Shown in pieces: positions 10,445-44,944 of a stretch of DNA of 64,000 bases; the first letter of the stretch is position 1, and each line of letters starts with the position of its first letter. The stretch spans positions 1 to 64,000 of the IMG/VR virus record IMGVR_UViG_3300036944_001289; one strand, 5' to 3'. Position numbers and translations under genes: made by a program. The notes below the pieces were generated by a model that was given only the letters and a program-made list of their open reading frames with translations, searched no databases and was not told the DNA's origin.

Positions 10445-12031
10445 TCAGAGAGCTTTATTAATGCTCTCATTTACTCGCGCTCGAATATCGGCTAGAGTAT
10501 AATCAATCAACAGCTTACCATCTCGGAAGACCTCTTTAAGATCGCAGTTATCAGCAACGACCTTGGTAACTTCGTCGTGGAGGACATAATCACCTTTGTC
10601 GTTCTTAAACACTGCAAGATAACCCTTAGCAGACTTCTTCATACCACCATCAGTCTTAGGATCCTTAAAGATCGCACGCTCTTCACCATTTACGGTTACC
10701 GATGTTGCCTTCATTGCAAATCCAAGAGTATCACGAGTACAATACTGATAGGTATAAGAACCAACACCGAGAACGACGTTAGTACTTGCGAACCCTTTCT
10801 TCATCAACCCTTCCATGATTTGATAGGCGCGCTCGAGTGTAATCGAGTCACCATAAATCAAACCAATGTGAGAGTCAAGAACTTTGAATCCTTTCTCAGT
10901 TACAGTACCACCGAACGTGTCCCAAAGGCACTGGATAGCTCCTTTGAATTCAGCTTCGGTGATCTCTTTTCCTGGTATCGCTTTAATCAGTGATGTGTTA
11001 TCGTCAAGGAAAATCTTACTGTCCTTTCGAATGACTTCGTCTTCATTGTAACCACAGATGATTCGAATAGGATCGCCAGAGTCAGGTCGGATTACAACCT
11101 TATCTCCAACAGGTCCACCTTTACGAGCGAGAATCTCGTTCTTAAGAGCAGGTAAGAATACTGTGATAACCTGCCAGAAGTCCCAAGTGTCGGATACAAT
11201 TGAGACAATACCTTGTGGATATAACTCAGTAATAAGACGTTTAAAGGTATAGAGTTCATCACCTTGACCACCAGCACACATTACAGAGTGTTCAGTCGCA
11301 GGTACCGAACAACCGACTAGCTCCTTATCAGAGTTAGCATTATAGTAATCTTCGAGTAGATCGATCGCAGGGATCGTATCGGTACCGAGATTACCAGCTG
11401 CAAGGTGAGCAGCACCAGACATTACCGCGTCCTGAGGGCTAGACATACCACGGAAGCTAAAATCGTGAGCTTGGAAGTCAACGAAATTAACATCAGCACC
11501 GGTAAGCTTTGCATATCTCTTAAGAAGAATACGATACTTACGAGCGGTTGTAGCACTGGTACAAGGCTTCCAAATCATATTACTCAAGATAGTCTCGAGA
11601 TAATTAGTAAGCCAAAAAGCACCTGAGGTGGTATTTTCGATAACAAACACCGGAATCTTCTCATCAACTACAGCACCCTCAGGTAGGGCACTAATAGAGA
11701 TTGGAAGATAACCGATGTCGTGTAACTGTTCGATATGATCAATAGGTACAGCTCCAGTACCTAGGTAGTTATCAAGACGGCGCTTATACTTCTTTATAAC
11801 CTTTTCTTTAGGCTGATTGAAGAACTCCTGATTAAAGGTATCAATAAGCAACCACTTTAGAAGATATTGAAGGCCAAAGAATACTACTTTATTATCAACT
11901 CCTTTTACTTTTGCAGCGTGTCTAGTAGAACGCGGGGTAAAGTTAGAGTAAACCAACTCAGTACCTACTGGATATTGACGACGATGGTCGGCTTTATAGC
12001 CATCGATTAGATTTAGCGGATTAGTTTTCAT
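10445..12031 (-). CDS. nadV: Nicotinamide phosphoribosyltransferase-like protein (NadV/Namat)
   Basis: DGYKADH, YSNFTPRS, HDFSFRG, SVPATEHSVM, SIVSDTWD, IRPDSGDP, GLIYGDSIT, KDPKTD..KKSAKG. Confidence 0.93.
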   Translation of the reverse strand: MKTNPLNLIDGYKADHRRQYPVGTELVYSNFTPRSTRHAAKVKGVDNKVVFFGLQYLLKWLLIDTFNQEFFNQPKEKVIKKYKRRLDNYLGTGAVPIDHIEQLHDIGYLPISISALPEGAVVDEKIPVFVIENTTSGAFWLTNYLETILSNMIWKPCTSATTARKYRILLKRYAKLTGADVNFVDFQAHDFSFRGMSSPQDAVMSGAAHLAAGNLGTDTIPAIDLLEDYYNANSDKELVGCSVPATEHSVMCAGGQGDELYTFKRLITELYPQGIVSIVSDTWDFWQVITVFLPALKNEILARKGGPVGDKVVIRPDSGDPIRIICGYNEDEVIRKDSKIFLDDNTSLIKAIPGKEITEAEFKGAIQCLWDTFGGTVTEKGFKVLDSHIGLIYGDSITLERAYQIMEGLMKKGFASTNVVLGVGSYTYQYCTRDTLGFAMKATSVTVNGEERAIFKDPKTDGGMKKSAKGYLAVFKNDKGDYVLHDEVTKVVADNCDLKEVFRDGKLLIDYTLADIRARVNESINKAL

Positions 12032-23653: not shown

Positions 23654-25183
23654 TTAAGCTTTGATTACTTCATAACGGTCACTACAAACTGTATCGATCA
23701 TCATGTTATAAGGTGTTGTTGATTTGTTAGACAAAACACTCTTCAAGATTGAAGGTGAACAGCCTGATACTAAGCAAGTACCTTTATCGTCATATTTAAC
23801 CGGTACATCACTATAAGAGTTAACATTCCAATATACAATTTGAGGCACGTTGTAACCAGCTGCAGCGTACTTTGCCTTAATAGCAGCATGATTAGTTACT
23901 TCACCGCTATTAAGAGAGTCTGGCCCGGTAGCACAATCAAATTGCATATCTGAGATAATATATACATGGGATGGCATTTCAGATTGCGGCACTTTATTAC
24001 TTACGCCTTTATCAAGTATAAGATCAAATACAGATTGTAGATTAGTATTAGCAACCTCACGTCTACCAAGAACATCAGTTACATTTTGTATTAGACTTGT
24101 ACCTGTAATCTTTAAAAGTTTAGCATTATGGGAGAAGATCATAAAATGATCTTTGAATGCACCTTCGTTTCGTTCAGCAAAATAAATTGCAATTGATACA
24201 GCAACATCAATAGGTGCTATGTTATTACCAATATTAGCATTATAATAGTTACAAGAGTCCATTGAAGCTGAAACGTCAGCTACAACAATACCATTATGCT
24301 TATTACCGGCAAGATAATCTGGTAAGGCCTTCCATTGGGCCTCTAGAGTACGATCTACGGACCGTATATTACGAACTGAACGTACAATATCATATGGGTA
24401 CAATACTGAAGCGTTAATCTTTTCTTCACCTTTCTCGACATTAGTTAAAAACTTTGAGTAACGGTCACCGTCATGTTCTTTGAATGCTTTACGGTAAGTG
24501 CTTGCAGCCTTTGAAGGTACCGCAGGATAATTGATCTTGTCCCATTCACCTACACACATTTTGCGTTCCACTACATCGATCTTTTTACGAAGAGCTGATA
24601 GAAGCTTACGATATTGCTTTGGAGAGTAATCTAAAGTAGTACGTACTTTCTTTGCAAGACGTTTGGTTACAGAAGATGAAGCCTGTTCACTTGGTGCCCA
24701 TTTAGCACATAGTGAAGGATTCTTTTCAGATGCATCTTCAATAAGTTTATCAGCAACAAATTTAAGTGCGATTTTTTCAAGAGATGTACCTTCAAGCGTC
24801 TCAAGTACGTTGTCCCAACGAGTAAACTCAGGGATCTGGATCAAGAGGTTCTTAGCTACTTTCTCATCGTTTTGCGCAAGCCACTTAAAGCAGTTACGGA
24901 AGAGCTTACGCTCACCTTGACCTTCACGTACATCTACTAGATAGAAGAGAATCTTAAGAGCGATAGTCTTATCCTCATTATAAGCGGAGCGGAAAAGTGT
25001 AATAGATGCATCATCTGGTTGTGAACGCATTGAACCACCTTTACCAAAAAAATCGAGCAAAGAAGTACCAGTAGTCGAATGACTTACCGCACCATTATGC
25101 GTCTTGATATCTCCTGTAGTTAAAGCACTGATAAGTGCGTTTTGCTTAGGAGCTGTCTTTTTGATTGTTTTTTTAGTTGCCAT
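23654..25183 (-). CDS. DUF2828/TROVE (Ro60-like) protein with C-terminal vWA domain
   Basis: T.NGA.SHSTTG..LLDFF, D.R.GQGER, SLCAKWAPSE, VE.KMC..W..INY..VPS.A, LYPYDIV, MIDAS DVSASM, ISDMQFD, IVYWN. Confidence 0.8.
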   Translation of the reverse strand: MATKKTIKKTAPKQNALISALTTGDIKTHNGAVSHSTTGTSLLDFFGKGGSMRSQPDDASITLFRSAYNEDKTIALKILFYLVDVREGQGERKLFRNCFKWLAQNDEKVAKNLLIQIPEFTRWDNVLETLEGTSLEKIALKFVADKLIEDASEKNPSLCAKWAPSEQASSSVTKRLAKKVRTTLDYSPKQYRKLLSALRKKIDVVERKMCVGEWDKINYPAVPSKAASTYRKAFKEHDGDRYSKFLTNVEKGEEKINASVLYPYDIVRSVRNIRSVDRTLEAQWKALPDYLAGNKHNGIVVADVSASMDSCNYYNANIGNNIAPIDVAVSIAIYFAERNEGAFKDHFMIFSHNAKLLKITGTSLIQNVTDVLGRREVANTNLQSVFDLILDKGVSNKVPQSEMPSHVYIISDMQFDCATGPDSLNSGEVTNHAAIKAKYAAAGYNVPQIVYWNVNSYSDVPVKYDDKGTCLVSGCSPSILKSVLSNKSTTPYNMMIDTVCSDRYEVIKA

Positions 25184-25189
25184 AATTCT

Positions 25190-25219
25190 AAGTATATTTT
25201 TTGTTTGCTGTCGATACTT
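25190..25219 (-). promoter_or_regulatory. CAGCAA-motif hairpin filling the 5' UTR of the DUF2828-like gene
   Basis: AAGTAT-CGA-CAGCAA-ACAAAAAAT-ATACTT, ending 6 nt before the ATG; same motif as four RNAs in the tRNA array. Confidence 0.7.
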
Positions 25220-25249
25220 CAGTTTTATTTTATATATGTTCCTTATTAA

Positions 25250-37491: not shown

Positions 37492-37568
37492 TGGTGCTCA
37501 GGGAGGGATTTGAACCCATCACTATTCGGCTTCTAAGACCGACGCCTCTACCGTTGGGCTACCTGAGC
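37492..37568 (-). tRNA. tRNA-Leu(UAG), short variable loop
   Basis: Cloverleaf, TCGGT-CT TAG AA-GCCGA, CCA encoded. Confidence 0.85.
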
Positions 37569-37697
37569 ATATCCGTTACTTATCGGGCGAACGGAACGAA
37601 GGCCATATCCGAAGCCATAAGGCTTGGAGGTTACGGTTACAGAAGGCGAACTGCTGGACTTGCCTTGTTGAGTCGAACTCAGCCATTACCGTCAAAT

Positions 37698-37773
37698 TGG
37701 TCAGGAGCCAGAGAATCAAACTCTGCCACCCAGGTTCACAGCCTAGTATGCTAATCACTACATCATCTCCTGA
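37698..37773 (-). tRNA. tRNA-His(GUG)
   Basis: CTAGG-CT GTG AA-CCTGG; U-1/A73 rather than G-1/C73. Confidence 0.8.
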
Positions 37774-37871
37774 TAAAAGCTTTCGGTAAGTTTCTTCCCC
37801 TATACGGCTGAAATTGAAGTCATTCAGTTGTTCCAAGGTTTACACCACCAGCTTCAATTCTGGTCCGAAAG

Positions 37872-37947
37872 TGGAGCACCAGGTCGGATTTGAACCGACA
37901 TGAATCAGGGTTGCAATCTGAGCCGTAGCCTTTCCGGTCACTGGTGC
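37872..37947 (-). tRNA. tRNA-Cys(GCA)
   Basis: TCAGA-TT GCA AC-CCTGA, U73, CCA. Confidence 0.85.
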
Positions 37948-38022
37948 ATATTCTTTCGGATTGCAATTCCATCCGCCGAACTCAACGGCAGCATGCCTTG
38001 GTGCCAGATGGCCGAAAGAAAG

Positions 38023-38101
38023 TGGTGGGGGCAACCGGAATGCGAGCCGGCATTTTACCTGTGAGAGAGGTATGTCCTTTACGTTTTTAGACGATGTCCC
38101 C
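38023..38101 (-). tRNA. tRNA-Glu(CUC), atypical T-loop
   Basis: TACCT-CT CTC AC-AGGTA, CCA. Confidence 0.75.
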
Positions 38102-38329
38102 ATAAATTGAGAACTTTTCAGTAGTATCGGTGATTAGACTTTCTGAAAAGAAAGAACAGACTTAAATCTAAAGATATACATCTTGGTTTCACCTACCATT
38201 GTTCTATTCTCAAATTTGTAGTTCGACCGACGGGATTCGCACCCGCGGGCAGACACTTTGCCAGCTTCTCTGCCTTACTAAACGGCGTCACGATCGAACA
38301 TACTCGAAGATAATTAGTCTTCGAGAAAG

Positions 38330-38405
38330 TGGTGTCCCGTGGAAGAGTCGAACTTCCATCGTTCGGTCCGTAGCCGAAGGTTCTGATCCATTGAACTAAC
38401 GAGAC
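38330..38405 (-). tRNA. tRNA-Arg(ACG)
   Basis: TTCGG-CT ACG GA-CCGAA, CCA. Confidence 0.9.
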
Positions 38406-38411
38406 ATAAAG

Positions 38412-38487
38412 TGGTGGAGAATACCGGCTTTGCTCCGGTCACCTATTGCTTGCAAAGCAATTGCTCTACTGAATGAGCTAACTCCCC
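38412..38487 (-). tRNA. tRNA-Ala(UGC)
   Basis: G3:U70, TTGC-TT TGC AA-GCAA, CCA. Confidence 0.88.
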
Positions 38488-38518
38488 AATAAACTCTCCC
38501 TGAATTATGCTTCAATGC

Positions 38519-38554
38519 TATAATGTAAGTAATTGCGCAATTACTTACATTATA
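38519..38554. repeat. Perfect 36-bp palindrome
   Basis: tataatgtaagtaattgc|gcaattacttacattata. Confidence 0.9.
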
Positions 38555-38588
38555 TTATGCATGAGAGGCACAGAGAGACTACTAAAAA

Positions 38589-38936
38589 TTATTGCTCTTT
38601 AAGCTTTCTATCAACATACGTTTTAAGATACTCTTTTAATTGAGATTTGTCTTGCCTTTTATCTCTCTCGATTATATTATCTATATATGTAAATAAAAAC
38701 TTTTGAGCTTCTTCTAAGCTACTTGTTGTAAACGTCTCACCATATGGCACGTTACGGAAATCATTAGATCCATTGACCAAAGGTAAGTACGTACCATCAT
38801 CTTTTTTTGTAACAGAGAGACGTCGACATTTATAATCTGGATACACCCAATTGAAAGGTTGTTGTTCTATATCAAGAACAACATGCCATTGATTTGGTTT
38901 ATCGAGTAAAGGACATCTGTATCTAGCTTTTCCCAT
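38589..38936 (-). CDS. hypothetical protein
   Basis: GGAAC-N5-TAAAAT motif upstream. Confidence 0.6.
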   Translation of the reverse strand: MGKARYRCPLLDKPNQWHVVLDIEQQPFNWVYPDYKCRRLSVTKKDDGTYLPLVNGSNDFRNVPYGETFTTSSLEEAQKFLFTYIDNIIERDKRQDKSQLKEYLKTYVDRKLKEQ

Positions 38937-38959
38937 ACCAAATTTTATTTTTGTTCCTT

Positions 38960-39148
38960 CTAACAGTGGTAATTAATAAATCTATTTGCTTGTTTCTTAG
39001 TAAGTGTGTCTCTACTTGAAGTAAAAGATCTTGCTTTAGAACAAGTTATCTTACCTTTACCAAAGCGTTTAGTTACCTTTGCTTTAAATCTTCCAGGATG
39101 TCTAGCTTTATGTATATTGGCTTCAAAAAATAAACTAAACGTGATCAT
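38960..39148 (-). CDS. Small basic protein, possible internal head protein
   Basis: MITFSLFFEA N-terminus; K/R-rich. Confidence 0.55.
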   Translation of the reverse strand: MITFSLFFEANIHKARHPGRFKAKVTKRFGKGKITCSKARSFTSSRDTLTKKQANRFINYHC

Positions 39149-39543
39149 TTTATTCTTAGACCTTCTGCTCTTAGAAATTTAAAGAAACTGGGTGCATCGT
39201 TTTCATATTTATCGTTAATTTCTATACTCATCTTATCTGTAGTCTTAGGGTTTGTACCTACTAATATCATCGTTATCTCTCTACTATCTTCAAAAGTATC
39301 TATAGCGTAAAATATGTTTAGAGGTTTTTCTTCTAGTTTTTTAATGATTGCTTGCTTTTTATCGTGTCTATTCAAACCGACAATACTTACTGTATCTTCT
39401 AAACTTTTACTAAAAAGACGTTGTATAGTGTTGTCGTAATCATCAGCCATCCAGAACATTATATAATAATCATCTGTTGTATCGTATCTTTTTGTAAACG
39501 CTATTTCAGTTAGATACTTTTCACTTATAATCTTGTCTTCCAT
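39145..39543 (-). CDS. Late protein, hypothetical
   Basis: TAAATA before MEDKIISE. Confidence 0.55.
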   Translation of the reverse strand: MEDKIISEKYLTEIAFTKRYDTTDDYYIMFWMADDYDNTIQRLFSKSLEDTVSIVGLNRHDKKQAIIKKLEEKPLNIFYAIDTFEDSREITMILVGTNPKTTDKMSIEINDKYENDAPSFFKFLRAEGLRIK

Positions 39544-39578
39544 ACTATTATTTATTAGATACAGTATCAATACAAAAA

Positions 39579-39673
39579 TGGCGGAGGGTGAGGGAATTTA
39601 ACCCTCACCGGCTTTTAAGGTCCGGTTTTGTTTAGCAAACAAATGTAGCAAGAACAATATCTACCTACCCTCC
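39579..39673 (-). tRNA. tRNA-Ser(GCU)
   Basis: TTTGT-TT GCT AA-ACAAA, long V-arm, G73, CCA. Confidence 0.85.
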
Positions 39674-39676
39674 AAA

Positions 39677-40009
39677 TTATTTTAGCTTAATAAGGCACTC
39701 ACCGTATGCTTCAAGTTCACCTGTTACTTTTTGAAATTCAGCCTGTGTCATACTCTTCCAACTTCTCAGTTTAGAAAAGCATTGATCTGCTTTAGATTCA
39801 ATAAATTTTGGATTCTCTATATTTTTAATACATTCTTTGTATGGTATTTCTTTTGCTTTAAAGTGTTGAGCTGTAAGCAGTGATGGACCACCTTTTGCTC
39901 TTGCAGATGCTTCTATCTTTTTTGCACCTTTAGATCTAACATTGAAAAATTCTTGATTCTTTGCATCAAGGTTGGATAGAGTCTTTTCTATTAGAAGATC
40001 AAAATTCAT
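39677..40009 (-). CDS. Late protein, hypothetical
   Basis: TAAATA before MNFDLLIEKTL. Confidence 0.6.
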   Translation of the reverse strand: MNFDLLIEKTLSNLDAKNQEFFNVRSKGAKKIEASARAKGGPSLLTAQHFKAKEIPYKECIKNIENPKFIESKADQCFSKLRSWKSMTQAEFQKVTGELEAYGECLIKLK

Positions 40010-40020
40010 TTAATTATTTA

Positions 40021-40350
40021 TTAATCTATCTTTTGCAAAGCTATTCTATACATGAAAGATGTTGCACCGCCAGGGTATATATTAAGATGTATTACCTTTA
40101 GTTTCACTCCTTGCTCTTCAGCTAATTTAAGTATATTTTTTGTATATAAATTACCTGCTTTTGCAGCAACTGCATAATGCTTTTTAACTGTCTCTTCTTT
40201 ATTTTTACGTTTAGCTAAACTTCTGATTATATTAGAATCCGGATTATCAGGGTTAATATAAAGATTACTATCAGGTGTTATATAATCTTCATACTTTTTA
40301 AGTACGCTACCTTCGCGTGATAACATACTTTGTATCATGTGTTTACCCAC
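40021..40350 (-). CDS. Late protein, hypothetical
   Basis: TAAATA upstream. Confidence 0.5.
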   Translation of the reverse strand: MGKHMIQSMLSREGSVLKKYEDYITPDSNLYINPDNPDSNIIRSLAKRKNKEETVKKHYAVAAKAGNLYTKNILKLAEEQGVKLKVIHLNIYPGGATSFMYRIALQKID

Positions 40351-40376
40351 TATTATATTTAGTTAAGAAATAAAAA

Positions 40377-40450
40377 CATCCAGCGTAAGAATCGAACTTA
40401 CCGCATTGAGTTTTGGAGACTCTATCGCCTACCTTGGAACATGGCTGGAT
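40377..40450 (-). tRNA. tRNA-Trp(CCA), CCA end not encoded
   Basis: GAGT-CT CCA AA-ACTC, T-arm GTAAG-TTCGATT-CTTAC. Confidence 0.8.
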
Positions 40451-40453
40451 AAA

Positions 40454-40527
40454 TGGTTGGCCTAGAGGGAATTAAACCCCCATTTCTCGCTAATCAGGCA
40501 AGCACACTATCATTGTGTTATAGGCCA
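40454..40527 (-). tRNA. tRNA-Ile(GAU)
   Basis: CTTGC-CT GAT TA-GCGAG (U37), CCA. Confidence 0.8.
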
Positions 40528-40528
40528 G

Positions 40529-40604
40529 TGGCTGGAGCTCTCGGTATCGATCCGAGATCTTCTGCTCTTCATGCAGACGTGAGCACCTGCTTCACCAAAC
40601 TCCA
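40529..40604 (-). tRNA. tRNA-Phe(GAA)
   Basis: TCTGC-AT GAA GA-GCAGA, CCA. Confidence 0.8.
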
Positions 40605-40796
40605 ATATGAGTTATTTAATAATCTACAGTGTCAACTCATCCACTGCAATGTCGTTCAATCTCTCCGAACTGTCAAGCCTTCTCTTCGTTGGATCAACGG
40701 CGGCTTTCCCTAAATTATTCCAATATTCAGACTTTTACTGCACTCTTTGATCATCACGACTATTGGAAATCGATGTGTTTTCTTTGTTAACAAAAA

Positions 40797-41087
40797 TTAT
40801 TTAAATTCCGAACTATCATATACATTACATAATAATGTAGCAAGTTCTTCTACTACATCTATTCTTTTTTCGTTTATTGGAGCATAATGACATCCAACAA
40901 ACTCTAAATCATCTATTAATTCACCAAGTAATCTATCCTGACTTTTTTCTCCATTTATAAAAACGGAATATGTTATTGCTCCAAAATTTATAGGATCTCG
41001 TTTTGCAACGAATTCAACATCTTTTATAGATGGATTTTTTTCCTTCATTTTGACTTTAATACGTTCAAGCGTTTCGTTTCTATTCAT
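40797..41087 (-). CDS. hypothetical protein
   Basis: ORF directly downstream of tmRNA. Confidence 0.55.
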   Translation of the reverse strand: MNRNETLERIKVKMKEKNPSIKDVEFVAKRDPINFGAITYSVFINGEKSQDRLLGELIDDLEFVGCHYAPINEKRIDVVEELATLLCNVYDSSEFK

Positions 41088-41091
41088 AAAA

Positions 41092-41479
41092 TGGTGGAGG
41101 TGGCGGGAATTGAACCCGCGTGTTTAACCCAAACCTCACTATTATCTACAAGCTTAGTAGTATTTAATAACTATTTTAAGGTATACTACAACCTGTAGAT
41201 AGTGGTATACATTTATATACTAGAGAATCCCAATGTATAACTGACTCTCTAATCTCACTATATAACGAAATTAAATTTTAGTGAGAATCAAATCTAGTTT
41301 CGATCGCTGTTTATTAAGCAGCGAATGCAAGGGCCTCAACAGGAGCAGCGCTCTTGAAGAAGTTCTTGATGTAATTTACAATGTTGCCATTTGTAGTTTT
41401 GATACTAGTTATAGAGATAATATCAATCTCTGCTTGCAAATAGAGCTGTATCGAATTAAGTCGAATCCTGTACACCCCC
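41092..41479 (-). ncRNA. ssrA: tmRNA
   Basis: 5' GGGGGTGTACAGGATTCGAC, 3' CGCGGGTTCAATTCCCGCCACCTCCACCA with G3:U70; internal tag ORF ...GNIVNYIKNFFKSAAPVEALAFAA*. Confidence 0.93.
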
Positions 41480-41604
41480 ATAAATTGGTCCCAAGTAAGG
41501 GTCGTCAATCTTACAATCCTACTATTACGTTTGGATGCCCTCTACCAGAGCCCAATCGAAAAGGGTCTAGTTTTTCCGGATTTCTACCGTACAACCTGAG
41601 AAAA

Positions 41605-41682
41605 TGGTAGGAGATAAGGGGCTCGAACCCTTCTGTTAATCGCTATGTAAAAGCGGTGACCAACCCTGCAGTCCCATCTCCT
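41605..41682 (-). tRNA. tRNA-Val(UAC)
   Basis: CGCT-TT TAC AT-AGCG, CCA. Confidence 0.8.
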
Positions 41683-41688
41683 GTAAAT

Positions 41689-41767
41689 TGGTGCATCAGA
41701 TGGGATTTTAACCCATGTAAATCTCGTTAAGAGCGAGGACCGTTAAACGAACTCCGGGCACTGATGC
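41689..41767 (-). tRNA. tRNA-Lys(CUU)
   Basis: CTCG-CT CTT AA-CGAG, CCA. Confidence 0.8.
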
Positions 41768-41858
41768 ATAAAGGTAGCAACATTAGGTCTTTGCTTTCCT
41801 ATAATTTCCTTATACCTGACTTAGCGCTGAGTATTATAGGTTAGTTGCTTTCGCAAAA

Positions 41859-41934
41859 TGGAGCATCGTGTGAGATTCGAACTCACGGAATCCTCTTTGG
41901 AAGAGAGGCGCACTAACCACTATGCGAACGATGC
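41859..41934 (-). tRNA. tRNA-Gly(UCC)
   Basis: CCTCT-CT TCC AA-AGAGG, U73, CCA. Confidence 0.9.
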
Positions 41935-41994
41935 ATAAATTACACGTACCCATTATTCACATTGATAACAAGAGGTATAGTACGTATGTTAAAG

Positions 41995-42087
41995 TGGAGG
42001 AGAGTGAGGGATTTGAACCCGTCGGGGCTTTTGAGGACCCTTCTATTTTCAAGATAGATGCCATAAACCGTACTCGGCCAACTCTCC
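41995..42087 (-). tRNA. tRNA-Ser(UGA)
   Basis: TCTAT-CT TGA AA-ATAGA, long V-arm. Confidence 0.85.
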
Positions 42088-42094
42088 ATAAAAA

Positions 42095-42169
42095 TGGCTG
42101 CCCGCCGTGGTTACGATCCACGCTCACCTGATTAACAGTCAGGGGTACTCGCCAGAATACGAGCAGGCA
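42095..42169 (-). tRNA. tRNA-Asn(GUU)
   Basis: CCTGA-CT GTT AA-TCAGG, G73, CCA. Confidence 0.85.
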
Positions 42170-42176
42170 ATAAAAA

Positions 42177-42266
42177 TTTATATCTAATGTTCTACCATGT
42201 TGAACTATCCTCCTTGTTCTATTGGGTAAGAGAGGAGCGGACCTTGAACCCGCATCTTTAGATAAA
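42177..42266 (-). ncRNA. Circularly permuted tRNA-like RNA without anticodon
   Basis: ATCTAA, T-arm GCGGG-TTCAAGG-TCCGC, TCCTC/GAGGA acceptor closed by a loop, D-arm GTTC-AACATGGTA-GAAC, TTAGAT. Confidence 0.7.
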
Positions 42267-42326
42267 GAGACTGGGTCTGCATAACAGACCCGAAAGCTCA
42301 CTGTACGCTTGGTACATGAACAAAAA

Positions 42327-42401
42327 TGGCGCTCCCAGTAGGGCTCGAACCTACATAATACGGCTTAGAAGACCGGTGCCTATCCATTAGACTATAGGAG
42401 C
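42327..42401 (-). tRNA. tRNA-Arg(UCU)
   Basis: CGGT-CT TCT AA-GCCG, CCA. Confidence 0.88.
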
Positions 42402-42406
42402 AAAAA

Positions 42407-42493
42407 TGGTGCGTCGGGAGGGACTCGAACCCTCGATGGGTTTAAACCGTGAGCTTAAAAGGCTCGACCTTTCGCCGCTAAGGGAACCGACGC
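42407..42493 (-). tRNA. tRNA-Lys(UUU) with long variable arm
   Basis: GAGC-CT TTT AA-GCTC, then CGGTTTAAACCCATC extra arm. Confidence 0.75.
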
Positions 42494-42502
42494 GTAAAAA
42501 AC

Positions 42503-42640
42503 TAAGTATATTTTTTGCGTTTACTGTGCTACCGTTACACTACTCTCCAATAAAGTATAAATTGGGTGGAGAGGTGGGAATTGAACCCACACTAGCATCT
42601 GTATATGATGATTGCGTTTTATTTTTGCTGTATATACTTA
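42503..42640 (-). ncRNA. Y-RNA-like (YrlA-architecture) RNA: CAGCAA terminal stem + permuted tRNA domain
   Basis: TAAGTATA/TATACTTA stem, TACAGCAA, T-arm GTGGG-TTCAATT-CCCAC, CTCTCCA/TGGAGAG acceptor closed by a loop, D-arm GTGT-AACGGTA-GCAC. Confidence 0.8.
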
Positions 42641-42643
42641 AAG

Positions 42644-42722
42644 TGGTACCCTAGGTGAGATTCGAACTCACACTGAAGAGTGTTTAAGACTCTGGCCATA
42701 CTACCAATTGGGCTACTAGGGC
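42644..42722 (-). tRNA. tRNA-Leu(UAA), short variable loop
   Basis: AGAGT-CT TAA AC-ACTCT, CCA. Confidence 0.85.
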
Positions 42723-42731
42723 GTAAAAAAA

Positions 42732-42807
42732 TGGAGTCTCGTATAGGAATTGAACCTATGTAATTTCTTTTGCAGAGAAAAGCCTGTAACCACTCGACCA
42801 ACGAGAC
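42732..42807 (-). tRNA. tRNA-Cys(GCA), second copy
   Basis: TTTCT-CT GCA AA-AGAAA, U73, CCA. Confidence 0.87.
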
Positions 42808-42813
42808 ATAAAA

Positions 42814-42890
42814 TGGTACCGATGAGCGGGATCGAACCGCCAAGCTTCTCCGTGAAAGGGAGGTGTCCTAACCAATTAGACGACATCGGC
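42814..42890 (-). tRNA. tRNA-Glu(UUC)
   Basis: CTCC-CT TTC AC-GGAG, CCA. Confidence 0.87.
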
Positions 42891-42902
42891 ATAAAAAATT
42901 TC

Positions 42903-42964
42903 AAAGTCCGTTTTTAGCTTGTATTGATTAATATTCAATTGCTTTTGATTGCTGTGCGGACTTT
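42903..42964 (-). ncRNA. CAGCAA-motif small RNA 1
   Basis: AAAGTCCG-CA-CAGCAA...AAAAA-CGGACTTT. Confidence 0.7.
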
Positions 42965-42970
42965 TATTAC

Positions 42971-43024
42971 TAAGTTCAGCTTTTTGTTGTATTCAATGAC
43001 ATTTAGTATTGCTGGATGAACTTA
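42971..43024 (-). ncRNA. CAGCAA-motif small RNA 2
   Basis: TAAGTTCA-TC-CAGCAA...AAAAAGC-TGAACTTA. Confidence 0.7.
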
Positions 43025-43027
43025 AAT

Positions 43028-43099
43028 TGGGTGCAGCGCTGGTACTCGAAACCAGAGAAGGTAGCTTATGAGACTCCTTGGGCAACCTGCCTCACTGCA
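43028..43099 (-). tRNA. tRNA-Met(CAU), atypical short D-arm
   Basis: CT CAT AA loop, TGCAGTG/CGCTGCA acceptor, CCA. Confidence 0.65.
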
Positions 43100-43167
43100 A
43101 TAAATTGGCGATGTAACTAATCTGAAATATTGACTTGTAAGCGTTCTTACCGTTACATTATTAAATA

Positions 43168-43243
43168 TGGTGGTAGAGGTGAGACTTGAACTCACAAATA
43201 AGAGCTTATGAAACTCTTGCCTAAACCGTTCGGCCTCTCTACC
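43168..43243 (-). tRNA. tRNA-Met/Ile2(CAU)
   Basis: AGAGT-TT CAT AA-GCTCT, CCA. Confidence 0.85.
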
Positions 43244-43244
43244 A

Positions 43245-43338
43245 TGGTAGTCAGGGAGGGAATTGAACCCTCGCTCGGCACCAATCTAGTGCTCACGGTT
43301 TATAAGGCCGTCGATGCTTCCAATTACATTACCTGACT
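43245..43338 (-). tRNA. tRNA-Ile(UAU) with long variable arm
   Basis: ACGG-C-CT TAT AA-A-CCGT, V-arm GCACTA-GAT-TGGTGC, CCA. Confidence 0.8.
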
Positions 43339-43344
43339 ATAAAA

Positions 43345-43418
43345 TGGCTGAGATGGCTGGTAACGCTCCAACTTCTTCGGGGTCAAAGTCCGAGGTAATA
43401 CTTTTATACGACATCTCA
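43345..43418 (-). tRNA. tRNA-Gln(UUG)
   Basis: U1:A72, CT TTG AC loop, G73, CCA. Confidence 0.82.
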
Positions 43419-43425
43419 ATAAAAT

Positions 43426-43511
43426 TGGTACGGTGTGAAGGAGTTGAACCTTCAAGGCTCATGCAGTCTAAATGCATACTGTCTGCCAAATTCCAGCTTA
43501 ACCAACACCGT
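43426..43511 (-). tRNA. tRNA-Leu(UAG), second copy, enlarged D region, no long V-arm
   Basis: ATGCA-TT TAG AC-TGCAT, CCA. Confidence 0.72.
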
Positions 43512-43518
43512 AATAAAA

Positions 43519-43592
43519 TGGTCCTCCACCTCGGTTACGCTCCGAGTCCTTTCCGCCCCAAACGGGAAATGCTACTATAACACCTGTGAAGG
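43519..43592 (-). tRNA. tRNA-Pro(UGG)
   Basis: CCG-TT TGG GG-CGG, C1:G72, A73, CCA. Confidence 0.78.
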
Positions 43593-43599
43593 ATAAAAA

Positions 43600-43675
43600 T
43601 GGCGATGGTACGGGGAAATTGAACCCCGACTTGAACAGTGACAGTGTTCTGTGCAAACCTTTACACTATACCATC
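43600..43675 (-). tRNA. tRNA-Asp(GUC)
   Basis: GAACA-CT GTC AC-TGTTC, G73, CCA. Confidence 0.88.
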
Positions 43676-43683
43676 GTAAAAAC

Positions 43684-43737
43684 TAAGTCCATTTATTTAC
43701 CTTATTGTAGTATTTTAATGGTTGCTGTCTGGACTTA
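43684..43737 (-). ncRNA. CAGCAA-motif small RNA 3
   Basis: TAAGTCCA-GA-CAGCAA...AATAAA-TGGACTTA. Confidence 0.7.
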
Positions 43738-43741
43738 AAAA

Positions 43742-44545
43742 TTATTTGATAGAGAAGTATTTTTTCCATTGTTTATATCTTGGAGATCCACCTTCTCGTT
43801 TATTAGCACCTTTATAAAATTGAGATAGTGAATGGCAGTTTGGACACAACAACTCTAAATTATCTGGAATGTTATTAATGCAATTACCATCTTTATGTTC
43901 TAACTCGATCGGTACTTTACCTGAAAAAGGATTTACTTCGGACCAACCACATTTCATACACCTTGGTCCAAATTTGCGAATTAAGTATCTTCTATATATT
44001 GTGTTATTTGTTTCAATATTTTGAGAAATAACCTTTCCTTCGATTAATAGTGGTTCTAATTCTTTTTCACGCTGGTTTTTTCTGTGTTCAGAAGAGCATA
44101 TTTGTTCACAAAATATTGACGTTTTTGCTACCGGTAAGAAGTCTCGTTCACAATTTAAACACTTTTTGTATTCTTTATATCTTAATGCAGGACCTCTTTT
44201 AAGGAAGCGATTATTGCTAATAAAATTTTCTGTATTTTTATGAACTTTGTTACAAACTCTTGTCTTGTTGATTGTTGTAGCAGCACAACTATTAGAGCAA
44301 AATTTATTTTCGTAACTAAAAAAGGAAATGTTACATGTCAGGCATACTTTTGTATTTTCTTCTATTATTTTTTGCTTTTCTTTTTCTTTACAAGAAGGAC
44401 AATCAAATTTATCTACGTTATGTTTTATATTATGCTTAATATAAATTTTAAGTCTTTTGGTTTCTGTTCCACAATCTTTACACCAGCAAGTAACTGAATC
44501 TTTATTTGTCGCGTTATCGAATTCTTCTTGGTTGAATTTATACAT
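43742..44545 (-). mobile_element. Free-standing HNH homing endonuclease in the tRNA array
   Basis: Multiple CxxC motifs; C..CGW...ELEHKDGN..NN...NLELLCPNCHS. Confidence 0.85.
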
Positions 44546-44591
44546 TTAATTATTTATTCATAAAATGGAGCTTTCAAGAGATAGTAATAAG

Positions 44592-44668
44592 TGGATCCCC
44601 CAGTCAGGTTCGAACTGACAACTTCCCGCTTACAAGGCGGGTACTCTACCAATTAAAGTTATGAGGGA
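44592..44668 (-). tRNA. tRNA-Thr(UGU)
   Basis: CCCGC-CT TGT AA-GCGGG, CCA. Confidence 0.88.
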
Positions 44669-44758
44669 ACAAAAAGGCAAGAAATGAATTTTTGAGAGTT
44701 TTATCGACAATATTCGTCGCATATTCAGCTAAAAGCGGTGTAGTCGCTCCCAAAAAAA

Positions 44759-44844
44759 TGGTGCCGCTGGCAGAATTCGAATCTGCAAAAACTCTACGTT
44801 CTCAACGTAGTAACTGTACCAATTTGTATTATTGTCACAGCGGC
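44759..44844 (-). tRNA. tRNA-Leu(GAG), enlarged D region, no long V-arm
   Basis: CTACG-TT GAG AA-CGTAG, CCA. Confidence 0.75.
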
Positions 44845-44850
44845 GAAAAA

Positions 44851-44944
44851 TGGTAGGAGTAGCAGGAATTGAACCTGCGATGTTTACCCAGAGGGACTTG
44901 ATTTACAGTCAAGTGCAGCACGACCCAGCAGCTACCTTACTCCT
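44851..44944 (-). tRNA. tRNA-Tyr(GUA)
   Basis: CTTGA-CT GTA AA-TCAAG, V-arm, A73, CCA. Confidence 0.85.

What the first reader, a model, noticed from the sequence alone, without database searches (positions are those of the whole stretch)
25184..25242. Probable translational autoregulation of the Ro-like gene by an RNA-mimic leader
Seen: the promoter motif (25227-25242) puts the transcript start near 25220, so almost the whole 5' UTR is AAGTAT-CGA-CAGCAA-ACAAAAAAT-ATACTT, ending 6 nt before the ATG. It shares a 16-nt exact match (CAAAAAATATACTTAG) with the 3' end of the Y-like RNA about 17 kb away (42502-42517). Inference: excess protein binds its own leader and blocks initiation, and the array RNAs titrate it, as in ribosomal-protein autoregulation by rRNA mimicry.
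Basis: partly seen in the sequence, partly recalled or inferred. Interest (0 to 1): 0.75.

Follow-up and report, generated by a model that had tools for sequence, protein, structure and literature searches.

The report
Mini Y-RNA hairpin leading Ro-like gene
The short hairpin in front of this phage's Ro-like gene is a stripped-down copy of the small Y-like RNAs that partner such proteins. The same hairpin sits in front of related genes in many phages, which makes feedback control of the protein's own synthesis plausible but still unproven.

Summary
The leader (25219-25188, minus strand) shares both arms and an invariant CAGCAA motif with a full Y-like RNA in the tRNA array (42639-42502). The array also holds three further stem-only copies.

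The gene (23654-25183) encodes a DUF2828/DUF7788 protein. Its predicted fold matches only Ro60/TROVE proteins over its full length.

In the three closest relatives that differ, the same leader position holds a complete Y-like RNA with a permuted tRNA-like module. The leader is therefore a homologue (a "mini-Y"), not an independent mimic.

Across 79 distinct homologous loci, 53 carry the hairpin upstream on the sense strand, against 0-5 in controls. Covariation is strong: 95% of cells paired and all 8 pairs compensated.

In about half of these loci the hairpin ends 4-13 nt from the ATG. It abuts the Shine-Dalgarno sequence in some clades and encloses both SD and AUG in KVP40-like phages.

The hairpin is thermodynamically weak (-1.1 kcal/mol), so any block of initiation would need bound protein.

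Binding and repression are inferred, not shown, and no RNA data were listed. Verdict: a new variant of the Ro-Y RNA system. Autoregulation is plausible at about 0.5. The main rival is a co-transcribed small-RNA gene.

The parts
25227..25242 (-). Promoter-like motif GGAACATATATAAAAT. It ends 7 nt before the first base of the hairpin.
   Evidence: The motif GGAAC-N4-6-TAAAAT occurs 11 times in the genome, all on the minus strand, against 0.7 in shuffles. It mostly lies 5-9 nt before an ATG. It is conserved at the same place in L084-L088.
25188..25219 (-). Leader hairpin ('mini-Y'). Arms AAGTAT (25219-25214) and ATACTT (25195-25190), invariant CAGCAA (25210-25205), and a trailing AG whose G is conserved.
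   Evidence: The covariance model R1 hits it at 33 bits. Homologous hairpins show covariation. It is 31/32 identical in L086, although third codon positions nearby are only 70-80% identical.
25184..25187 (-). 4-nt spacer (AATT) between the element and the ATG. There is no Shine-Dalgarno sequence.
   Evidence: The spacing element-NNNN-ATG is kept in the window and in L084-L088. Only 10 of 197 long ORFs in the genome have an SD.
23654..25183 (-). Ro60-like protein gene (509 aa), DUF2828 + DUF7788.
   Evidence: Pfam hits at 3e-39 and 4e-44. The AF2 model has pLDDT 78.8. The top 13 Foldseek PDB hits are all Ro60/TROVE over more than 510 columns. The MIDAS residues D303, S305 and S307 are invariant.
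42502..42639 (-). Full-length Y-like RNA (Y2), between tRNA-Leu(taa) and tRNA-Lys. It has the same arms as the leader, plus CAGCAA and a permuted tRNA-like module.
   Evidence: The fold is -28.7 kcal/mol, z = -2.8, with a terminal stem, T arm, closed 7-bp acceptor-like stem and D arm. Its 3' half aligns with the leader Y RNAs of L084, L085 and L087.
42969..43025 (-). Stem-only Y-like hairpin in the tRNA array (AAGTTCA...CAGCAA...TGAACTTAG).
   Evidence: R1 hit at 28 bits. Sequence. Fold -6.6 kcal/mol.
42901..42965 (-). Stem-only Y-like hairpin in the tRNA array (AAGTCCG...CAGCAA...CGGACTTTG).
   Evidence: R1 hit at 34.7 bits. Sequence. Fold -11.5 kcal/mol, z = -3.2.
43682..43738 (-). Stem-only Y-like hairpin just upstream of tRNA-Asp (AAGTCCA...CAGCAA...TGGACTTAG).
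   Evidence: R1 hit at 30.1 bits. Sequence. Fold -11.6 kcal/mol, z = -2.7.
42170..42326 (-). A second, different YrlA-like RNA (Y1), between tRNA-Arg(tct) and tRNA-Asn. It lacks the CAGCAA motif.
   Evidence: Rfam YrlA RF02553 scores 28.8 bits, below the gathering score of 69, with T arm, acceptor-like stem and D arm aligned.

Best explanation
The leader is a minimal, stem-only member of a conserved family of Y-like RNAs. These RNAs accompany the DUF2828 class of Ro60-like phage proteins.

The family signature is a terminal helix, here AAGU-NNN paired with NNN-ACUU. An invariant CAGCA(A) follows immediately 3' of the 5' arm. Next comes an A/C-rich loop, which may or may not contain a permuted tRNA-like module. 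A conserved unpaired G follows the 3' arm.

Inferred mechanism:
1. Transcription from the GGAAC...TAAAAT promoter starts at about the first base of the helix.
2. The DUF2828 mRNA therefore begins with this module, which ends 6 nt before the AUG.
3. The free hairpin is too weak to hinder the ribosome.
4. When the Ro-like protein is in excess over its free Y-like RNAs (one full-length and three stem-only copies in the tRNA array), it binds the leader copy and occludes the initiation region. This lowers its own synthesis.
5. The more stable array RNAs compete for the protein and relieve the repression.

Shown:
- homology of the leader with the Y-like RNAs
- family-wide conservation and covariation of the helix
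- its recurrent placement against the start codon or SD
- the Ro60 fold of the protein

Inferred:
- the transcript start
- protein binding
- repression
- titration
For: Protein:
- Full-length Foldseek matches go only to Ro60/TROVE (E from 5e-8 to 1e-3).
- The MIDAS motif is invariant.

RNA identity:
- The leader shares both arms, CAGCAA and the 3' AG with Y2. The chance expectation is about 1e-9 jointly.
- Only five such elements exist in the 209-kb genome. All are on the gene's strand.

Close relatives:
- L084, L085 and L087 have a full Y-like RNA at the same place, between the same promoter motif and the ATG.
- L086, L088, L089, L004 and L005 have stem-only versions whose arms changed in a compensatory way: GT/AC, GCT/AGC, TCG/CGA, AAT/ATT.

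Family-wide:
- 95% of cells are paired, 101 cells are doubly changed, and all 8 pairs covary. Slid controls give 20-40%.
- The element lies upstream on the sense strand in 53 of 79 distinct loci, against 0-5 in controls.
- CAGC is invariant and the 3' G is at least 90% conserved.

Placement:
- About 30 loci have the helix ending 4-13 nt from the ATG.
- In the AAGTTGAT clade and in phage DLP_6, the conserved 3' G is the first G of the SD sequence GGAG.
- In KVP40, nt-1, VH7D, 1.081.O and VS2 the 3' arm contains the AUG and the loop contains the SD.

Selection:
- The intergenic region is 63/66 identical to L086, against 70-80% at third codon positions. The binomial p is 1e-5 to 3e-4.

Context:
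- Other genes with this promoter type have only 5-9 nt between motif and ATG. This gene has 43 nt, nearly all of it hairpin.
- The leader helix (-1.1 kcal/mol) is weaker than the array copies (-6.6 to -11.6). This is the affinity order expected of a feedback operator.
Against: - No binding, transcript-end or expression data exist. No RNA run was listed.
- The element also occurs as free-standing copies. They lie in tRNA arrays or downstream of the gene in Felixounavirus VpaE1 and mycobacteriophage JoeDirt, or 40-140 nt upstream of the ATG in L004, L089, Bacillus PJN02 and others. Its basic role is therefore that of a small RNA, and closeness to the ATG could partly reflect tight phage gene packing.
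- In L084, L085 and L087 the leader is a complete Y-like RNA. This looks like a co-transcribed sRNA gene that may be cut off the mRNA.
- The leader helix has only 6 A-U-rich pairs and z = -0.15.
- The KVP40-type arms are invariant, so they give no covariation.
- Aeromonas phages phiAS5 and PX29 show no element in the leader.
Confidence: 0.5

Rival explanations
1. Co-transcribed small-RNA gene only. The leader is a mini Y-like RNA (comparable to YrlB beside YrlA) made from the same promoter as the protein gene. It is released by processing and acts in trans with the protein. It has no effect on translation of the downstream ORF.
For: - Y RNA genes normally lie next to their Ro gene on the same strand. 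Examples are Chen et al. 2014, PMC4201824, and Thermus phage phiLo Yrl1/Yrl2 upstream of the Ro60 gene, PMC12135203.
- Close relatives carry a full Y-like RNA in the leader.
- Identical elements stand free in tRNA arrays.
- The distance to the ATG is variable across the family.
Against: - Nothing separates the element from the ATG. There is no promoter, no terminator and only 4-6 nt. Any mRNA for the gene must carry the element or be cut within 6 nt of the AUG.
- The element repeatedly abuts or overlaps the SD or AUG in unrelated clades.
- In KVP40-like phages the AUG is part of the helix, so the element cannot be removed without destroying the start.
Confidence: 0.3
2. 5'-terminal stabiliser. 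The helix, with or without bound Ro-like protein, sits at the very 5' end of the mRNA and protects it from 5'-end-dependent decay. The effect would be positive or neutral rather than repressive.
For: - The promoter-like motif places the start at about the first base of the helix.
- From general knowledge, Ro binding stabilises Y RNAs, and 5' stem-loops protect bacterial mRNAs.
Against: - The helix is very weak on its own (-1.1 kcal/mol).
- In clades where the gene lies inside a tRNA/Y-RNA polycistron, the element is not 5'-terminal (L038).
- The overlap with SD and AUG in other clades argues for an effect on initiation.
Confidence: 0.1
3. Evolutionary remnant. The hairpin is what is left or shared after exchange of the tRNA-like module between the leader copy and the array copy Y2. 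It has no present function.
For: - Leader and Y2 have identical arms. The other three copies differ, which suggests recent duplication or gene conversion.
- The helix is short and weak.
Against: - The region is 63/66 identical to L086, where neutral sites are 70-80% identical.
- Independent stem-only leaders keep pairing through compensatory changes.
- The protein tree places the stem-only forms basal to the full forms, so they are long-lived.
Confidence: 0.07
4. Chance or a DNA-level signal. The region scores as a sigma-70-like promoter: TCGACA, 18 nt, TAGAAT.
For: The consensus scan gives 10 of 12 matches at 25214-25185. L086 reads TTGACA at the same place.
Against: - Four such sites were found in the 800-nt region against 3.3 expected.
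- The -10 hexamer ends 1 nt before the ATG, so transcripts would start inside the ORF.
- The -35 likeness is a by-product of the invariant ACAGCA motif.
- Covariation of the arms is an RNA-level signal.
Confidence: 0.03

Closest known systems
Bacterial Ro60 (Rsr) with YrlA/YrlB or Yrn1 Y RNAs (Salmonella, Deinococcus, mycobacteria; Chen et al. 2014, PMC4201824)
   Same: - A ring-shaped HEAT-repeat plus vWA protein.
- Small RNAs encoded beside it on the same strand.
- One RNA type has a terminal protein-binding stem plus a permuted tRNA-like module (compare YrlA). Another lacks the module (compare YrlB).
- The full-length forms here give sub-threshold Rfam YrlA hits.
   Different: - The protein belongs to Pfam DUF2828/DUF7788, not TROVE. 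It is only 10-16% identical to solved Ro60s.
- The stem motif is CAGCA(A) with an AAGU/ACUU-type closing helix, not GNCGAA.
- Most copies are stem-only.
- One copy forms the mRNA leader directly against the start codon.
- No autoregulation of Ro through its own mRNA was found in the held literature.
Thermus phage phiLo Ro60 with Yrl1/Yrl2 (PMC12135203; PDB 9KOP, 9L5Y)
   Same: A phage-encoded Ro60-type protein, which is the best structural match to the model. Two Y-like RNAs lie upstream of its gene and bind it in vitro.
   Different: - The phiLo protein is a canonical TROVE protein.
- Its RNAs were found through the CGAA motif.
- They are described as separate small RNAs, not as a translational operator.
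Autoregulation of ribosomal proteins and phage RNA-binding proteins through an mRNA site resembling their main RNA ligand (L1, S8, L20, S15; T4 gp32 and RegA; MS2 coat protein). This comparison rests on general knowledge.
   Same: - The mRNA site resembles the main ligand.
- It lies on the translation initiation region.
- It is predicted to be weaker than the primary ligand.
- Competing free RNA would relieve repression.
   Different: - Here the mRNA site is a true homologue (paralogue) of the ligand, not a convergent mimic.
- Binding and repression are untested.
Felixounavirus Bas63 gp130 (PMC11482910)
   Same: - A Ro60-like phage protein next to a tRNA array. The related Felixounavirus VpaE1 gene is 38% identical to the window protein.
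- The authors speculated that some 'tRNA genes' are Y RNAs.
   Different: - The paper identified no Y RNAs.
- Here three stem-only and one full Y-like RNA with the CAGCAA motif are located in the array gaps of VpaE1.
- In that lineage they lie downstream of the gene, not in its leader.

Membership tests
Ro60 / TROVE proteins | Ring of HEAT-like helical repeats followed by a vWA domain | tested here: met
   In the AF2 model, helices span residues 41-285 and an alpha/beta domain spans 298-499. The top 13 Foldseek PDB hits are all Ro60/TROVE over 510-588 columns.
Ro60 / TROVE proteins | MIDAS motif (DxSxS) in the vWA domain | tested here: met
   D303, S305 and S307 are invariant in 29 homologues.
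Ro60 / TROVE proteins | Sequence membership in Pfam TROVE (PF05731) | tested here: not met
   Only DUF2828 and DUF7788 are hit at E <= 0.01. There is no sequence hit to any PDB chain at E <= 1.
Y RNA, YrlA type (Rfam RF02553) | Encoded next to a Ro-type gene on the same strand | tested here: met
   The leader element ends 4 nt before the ATG. The array copies are 17-18 kb away on the same strand.
Y RNA, YrlA type (Rfam RF02553) | Terminal helix formed by the 5' and 3' ends | tested here: met
   The helix covaries across 51 distinct sequences, with 95% of cells paired.
Y RNA, YrlA type (Rfam RF02553) | GNCGAA(N)G Ro-binding motif near the 5' end | tested here: not met
   The invariant motif is CAGC(A), as shown in the alignments. 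No conserved CGAA is present.
Y RNA, YrlA type (Rfam RF02553) | tRNA-like module (T arm, closed acceptor stem, D arm) | tested here: not met
   The module is absent from the leader (32 nt). It is present in Y2 and in the leaders of L084, L085 and L087.
Y RNA, YrlA type (Rfam RF02553) | Score at or above the Rfam gathering threshold (69 bits) | tested here: not met
   The leader gives no hit. The best related scores are 28.8 bits (Y1), 38.2 (L065) and 33.6 (L017).
Y RNA, YrlA type (Rfam RF02553) | Bound by the Ro-type protein | not testable with these tools
   Needs EMSA, RIP or a similar assay.
Translational operator resembling the protein's main RNA ligand | The mRNA site shares the ligand's recognition features | tested here: met
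   Both arms, CAGCAA and the 3' AG are shared with Y2 and with the family consensus.
Translational operator resembling the protein's main RNA ligand | The site overlaps or abuts the ribosome-binding region | tested here: met
   The helix ends 6 nt before the AUG here. It abuts the SD or includes the AUG in other clades.
Translational operator resembling the protein's main RNA ligand | The protein binds the site and lowers translation; free ligand relieves it | not testable with these tools
   No RNA or expression data could be obtained.

The most novel reading that the evidence does not exclude
DUF2828 Ro-like proteins are encoded in more than 700 sequenced phages. Among them are Felixounaviruses, KVP40-like vibriophages, Listeria, Bacillus and Campylobacter phages and mycobacteriophages.

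The proposal is that these proteins recognise a previously undescribed RNA module: a closing helix plus CAGCAA. In many lineages a stem-only copy of this module placed on the gene's own initiation region would act as a feedback operator, titrated by the free Y-like RNAs of the tRNA array.

This would be the first case of a Ro-family protein controlling its own translation through a Y-RNA-derived site.
Probability: 0.4. Interest if true: 0.78.

Novelty: new variant of a known kind. Interest (0 to 1): 0.68.

Why it matters
- **An RNA partner for an unstudied family.** Ro60-Y RNA particles are known from animals, bacteria and a few phages. The large DUF2828 branch of phage Ro-like proteins had no identified RNA partner. 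One member (Bas63 gp130) was recently reported to counter an anti-phage defence, with Y RNAs only guessed at. The work here gives that family a concrete, testable RNA signature.
- **Modular RNAs.** The RNAs come in stem-only and tRNA-like forms.
- **Possible self-limitation.** One copy is often built into the protein's own initiation region. If the feedback loop is real, it would show how a phage balances a Ro-type protein against its RNA partners. It would also add Ro to the RNA-binding proteins that regulate themselves through a copy of their ligand.
- **Ready test systems.** Laboratory phage-host pairs carrying the element are available: nt-1 on V. natriegens, Felixounaviruses on E. coli K-12, PJN02 on B. 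subtilis and JoeDirt on M. smegmatis.

Tried and rejected
- **DNA search against phages.** blastn of the locus against the phage collection gave no match.
- **Single-protein locus search.** The search of IMG/VR with one protein found nothing. The alignment-based search worked.
- **Sequence search of the PDB.** No hit. Only the fold search showed the Ro60 relationship.
- **Rfam.** No family hits the leader. YrlA hits on the full-length RNAs are all below threshold.
- **Thermodynamics.** Leader hairpins here and in KVP40, nt-1 and DLP_6 fold no better than shuffles. Stability alone gives no support.
- **Mismatch-tolerant pattern search.** With 3 mismatches, the count of 16-mer matches is not above shuffles (6 versus 3.4). 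Only the exact and 1-mismatch copies are informative.
- **Deletion hypothesis.** I first read the window's leader as a deletion derivative of a full leader Y RNA, through AACAAAAA direct repeats seen in L085. The protein tree puts the stem-only forms (P0006, P0004, P0001) outside the clade of full forms (P0002, P0003, P0005), with weak inner support. Gain of the module, for example by exchange with an array copy, is at least as likely, so the direction is left open.
- **Broad MAFFT alignment A4.** It is out of register between clades on the 3' arm. It was used only for the invariant CAGC and G columns, not for pair counts.
- **Sigma-70-like match inside the hairpin.** Rejected, because the count is not above chance and it would start transcription inside the ORF.
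- **RNA evidence.** Two DNA runs from a shale-gas metagenome hold the sequence, but no RNA run was listed.
- **Closest long relative.** The whole record behind L089 could not be searched.

Full report
**Observation**

The gene at 23654-25183 (minus strand, 509 aa) is preceded by a 66-nt intergenic region. Read on the minus strand, the region contains in order:
- GGAACATATATAAAAT (25242-25227)
- seven bases
- AAGTAT (25219-25214)
- CGA
- CAGCAA (25210-25205)
- an A-rich stretch
- ATACTT (25195-25190)
- AG
- AATT
- ATG at 25183

The 16-mer CAAAAAATATACTTAG is found exactly twice in the window and in the whole 209-kb genome, at 25203-25188 and 42517-42502. There is also one 15/16 copy inside an ORF at 40142-40127. 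From base composition, 0.0003 further exact copies are expected.

AAGTAT-NNN-CAGCAAA occurs at 25219-25204 and at 42639-42624. The leader therefore looks like the array RNA with its middle removed.

**The protein**

Pfam assigns DUF2828 and DUF7788. There is no sequence match in the PDB.

An AlphaFold2 model built on 29 homologues has pLDDT 78.8. Its 13 best Foldseek matches in the PDB are all Ro60/TROVE proteins aligned over 510-588 columns:
- Thermus phage phiLo Ro60, E = 5e-8, TM 0.56-0.61
- Xenopus Ro
- Deinococcus Rsr
- human Ro60

The vWA MIDAS residues D303, S305 and S307 are invariant. 'Ro-like' is therefore right at the level of fold, although the protein is not a Pfam TROVE member.

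tblastn finds homologues in 705 phage records, all below 60% identity. Several are annotated 'Ro-like RNA binding protein'.

**Y-like RNAs in the window**

The minus strand between 37.4 and 45 kb carries 24 tRNA genes and a tmRNA.

Between tRNA-Leu(taa) and tRNA-Lys lies a 138-nt RNA, Y2 (42639-42502). It has a terminal helix, a T arm with a GTTCAATTC loop, a 7-bp acceptor-like stem closed by a loop, and a D arm. This is the circularly permuted tRNA layout of YrlA-type Y RNAs. It folds at -28.7 kcal/mol with z = -2.8.

I built a covariance model of the stem-only element (R1). It finds the leader and three more copies in the array, at 43025-42969, 42965-42901 and 43738-43682. It finds nothing else in the 209-kb genome.

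All five copies read AAGT-NNN...CAGCAA...NNN-ACTT-(A/T)G. The variable triplets are complementary within each copy: ATA/TAT, TCA/TGA, CCG/CGG and CCA/TGG.

A further YrlA-like RNA without this motif, Y1, lies at about 42326-42170. Rfam scores it 28.8 bits, below threshold.

**Close relatives**

The protein database gave a graded series of relatives. Their contigs show the following:
- **L084 (86% aa identity), L085 (83%) and L087 (79%).** A complete Y-like RNA of about 110 nt lies between the same promoter-like motif and the ATG. It has the terminal helix, CAGCA, a T arm, a short stem closed by a tetraloop, and a D arm (consensus fold). It ends with ...ACTTAG, four bases before the ATG.
- **L086 (85%).** It has the window's short form with one loop change.
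- **L088 (71%), L089 (65%), L004 (56%) and L005 (55%).** They have short forms whose arms differ but remain complementary: AAGTGT/ACACTT, AAGTGCT/AGCACTT, AAGTTCG/CGAACTT and AAGTAAT/ATTACTT.

The leader hairpin is therefore a homologue of a Y-like RNA, not a separately evolved look-alike.

The protein tree places the short-leader phages outside the clade with full leaders, though inner support is weak. I leave open whether the tRNA-like module was lost here or gained there. The identical arms of the leader and Y2 suggest a recent exchange between the two sites.

**Family-wide conservation**

- In 18 hand-picked leaders the 8-bp helix is 92% paired, with 17 doubly changed cells.
- In the 51 distinct R1 matches it is 95% paired, with 101 doubly changed cells. 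Every one of the eight pairs shows compensatory types. When the partner column is slid, pairing falls to 20-40%.
- A rule-based scan asked for an arm of at least 7 perfect pairs, followed within 4 nt by CAGC. It finds the element upstream on the sense strand in 53 of 79 distinct loci. Controls give 1 on the antisense strand, 2-5 inside the gene and 0-5 in shuffles.
- CAGC is invariant, and the following A and the 3' G are at least 90% conserved.
- In five IMG/VR records, including a complete 258-kb genome, all R1 matches lie next to the DUF2828 gene on its strand.

The element also occurs beside the gene in well-known phages:
- E. coli Felixounavirus VpaE1: three short and one full copy in the tRNA-array gaps downstream.
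- Listeria LP-124: three upstream.
- Campylobacter CP30A: two upstream.
- Bacillus PJN02: six upstream.
- Mycobacteriophage JoeDirt: three downstream, one with a tRNA-like module.

**Placement relative to the start codon**

By my start-codon assignments, about 30 loci have the helix ending 4-13 nt from the ATG. In the rest the distance is 17-143 nt.
- In the window's clade the spacing element-NNNN-ATG is kept in both short and full forms.
- In the AAGTTGAT clade, in Synechococcus phage B23 and in Stenotrophomonas phage DLP_6, the element ends at or just before the Shine-Dalgarno sequence. The conserved 3' G is the first G of GGAG in the AAGTTGAT clade and in DLP_6.
- In KVP40, nt-1, VH7D, 1.081.O and VS2 a sigma-70-type promoter is followed by GACATT-NN-ACAGCAA. 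The SD lies in the loop and the 3' arm AATGTC contains the AUG. These arms are invariant, so they give no covariation.
- Aeromonas phages phiAS5 and PX29 show nothing comparable.

**Promoter and translation context**

GGAAC-N4-6-TAAAAT occurs 11 times in the genome, always on the minus strand, against 0.7 expected. In most cases only 5-9 nt separate it from an ATG, which implies leaderless or near-leaderless mRNAs. The DUF2828 gene is the exception among those with a nearby ORF, with 43 nt, almost all of it hairpin.

Only 10 of 197 long ORFs have a Shine-Dalgarno sequence. Initiation here probably depends on an open 5' region.

The intergenic region is 63/66 identical between the window and L086, while third codon positions of the flanking genes are 70-80% identical. 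The binomial p is 1e-5 to 3e-4.

**Stability**

The leader helix alone is marginal, at -1.1 kcal/mol with z = -0.15. The array copies fold at -6.6 to -11.6 kcal/mol. Leader hairpins of other phages are similarly weak.

A weak helix cannot block the ribosome by itself. Any repression must come from a bound factor. A leader site weaker than the free RNAs is the order expected for feedback control, but it is equally what a decaying copy would look like.

**Mechanism and rivals**

My best reading, at about 0.5, is as follows. The mRNA begins with a stem-only Y-like module. The Ro-like protein binds it when not occupied by the array RNAs. Binding 6 nt from the AUG lowers initiation.

The identity of the element as a Y-like RNA module under selection is well supported (about 0.85). 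Binding and repression are inference.

The rivals are:
- **Co-transcribed small-RNA gene with no effect on translation (0.3).** This fits the canonical position of Y RNA genes and the free-standing copies. It explains less well the repeated overlap with SD and AUG.
- **5'-end stabiliser (0.1).**
- **Functionless remnant (0.07).** The conservation argues against it.
- **Sigma-70-like promoter match inside the hairpin (0.03).** It is not above chance and would start inside the ORF.

**Comparison with what is known**

Ro60-Y RNA systems, YrlA-type tRNA mimicry, and Y-like RNAs upstream of phage Ro60 genes are already described (PMC4201824, PMC12135203).

A Ro60-like protein of the Felixounavirus Bas63, next to its tRNA array, counters the ppl defence. 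Its Y RNAs were only conjectured (PMC11482910).

The held literature has five papers mentioning DUF2828, none about phages. It has none describing Ro autoregulation through its own mRNA.

Three things appear new:
- the CAGCAA-helix signature of the DUF2828 branch
- the abundance of stem-only forms
- the copy built into the gene's initiation region

I file this as a new variant of a known kind.

**Limits**

The phage comes from a shale-gas metagenome. Two DNA runs hold it and no RNA run was listed. Transcript ends, processing and expression are therefore unknown.

Start codons in the metagenomic loci were assigned by rule. The closest long relative could not be searched beyond 10 kb.

Noticed in passing
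window 41092-41479 (-): A phage-encoded tmRNA (Rfam RF00023, 133.9 bits, full length) sits inside the tRNA array. The array holds 24 tRNA genes (37492-44944).
   Followed up: no
window 42170-42326 (-): A second kind of YrlA-like RNA (Y1) has a T arm, closed acceptor-like stem and D arm, but lacks the CAGCAA motif. Its 5' part contains an extra 7-bp hairpin. The Rfam YrlA score is 28.8 bits, below threshold, and the alignment's terminal stem runs into tRNA-Asn.
   Followed up: partly
window 40127-40142 (-): A 15/16 copy of the shared 16-mer lies inside a small ORF between tRNA genes, with no matching 5' arm. The expected number of such copies is 0.013, so it may be a relic of another element.
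   Followed up: partly
whole genome G000; e.g. window 38957, 30624, 16233, 45157, 45382 (-): The promoter-like motif GGAAC-N4-6-TAAAAT is confined to the minus strand at 3.8-51 kb and 183-206 kb. It usually lies 5-9 nt before an ATG, which implies leaderless mRNAs. Two copies precede the tRNA array. Only 10 of 197 long ORFs have a Shine-Dalgarno sequence. Many plus-strand genes have ATAAATA-type motifs directly before the ATG.
   Followed up: partly
window ~43745-44545 (-): An ORF inside the tRNA array reads like an HNH endonuclease (...EHKDGN...CPNCH...). This was seen by eye in the sequence and not checked with a profile search.
   Followed up: no
L038:3071-3188 and L038:3360-3478: Two tRNA-shaped genes score 44-47 bits on the Rfam tRNA model. 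Each has an insertion of about 45 nt in place of the anticodon arm. The insertion carries the Y-stem motifs (...ATCTAG, loop, AGAT..ACAGCAA). They look like non-permuted versions of the full Y-like RNA. In this phage the DUF2828 gene lies inside the tRNA array.
   Followed up: partly
L091:2952-3006 (KVP40), L096, L097, L098, L099: In KVP40-like vibriophages the DUF2828 leader follows a near-consensus sigma-70 promoter. It forms a CAGCAA hairpin whose loop holds the SD and whose 3' arm holds the AUG. The arrangement is conserved in five phages.
   Followed up: partly
L090:4216-4992 (E. coli phage VpaE1): Three stem-only and one full Y-like RNA (GAAGACC..ACAGCAA..GGTCTGG) lie in unannotated gaps of the tRNA array, just downstream of the DUF2828 gene. 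This is the same genus as Bas63, whose homologue counters the ppl defence.
   Followed up: partly
L019:1474-1525 and relatives (L026, L030, L038, L045): In the AAGTTGAT clade, the loop begins with AATCAAC directly after CAGCA. This can pair with the 5' arm instead of the distal 3' arm, so two mutually exclusive helices are possible (MFE).
   Followed up: no
L092:5812-7023 (Listeria LP-124); fO4ZZVDQ (no-DNA contig) 10960-11364: RNA-repair and translation-rescue genes lie near DUF2828 genes. An RtcB-like ligase is 1.3 kb downstream in LP-124. A Pth2-family hydrolase lies about 6 kb downstream in the no-DNA contig of P0004. NADAR lies upstream in L085.
   Followed up: no
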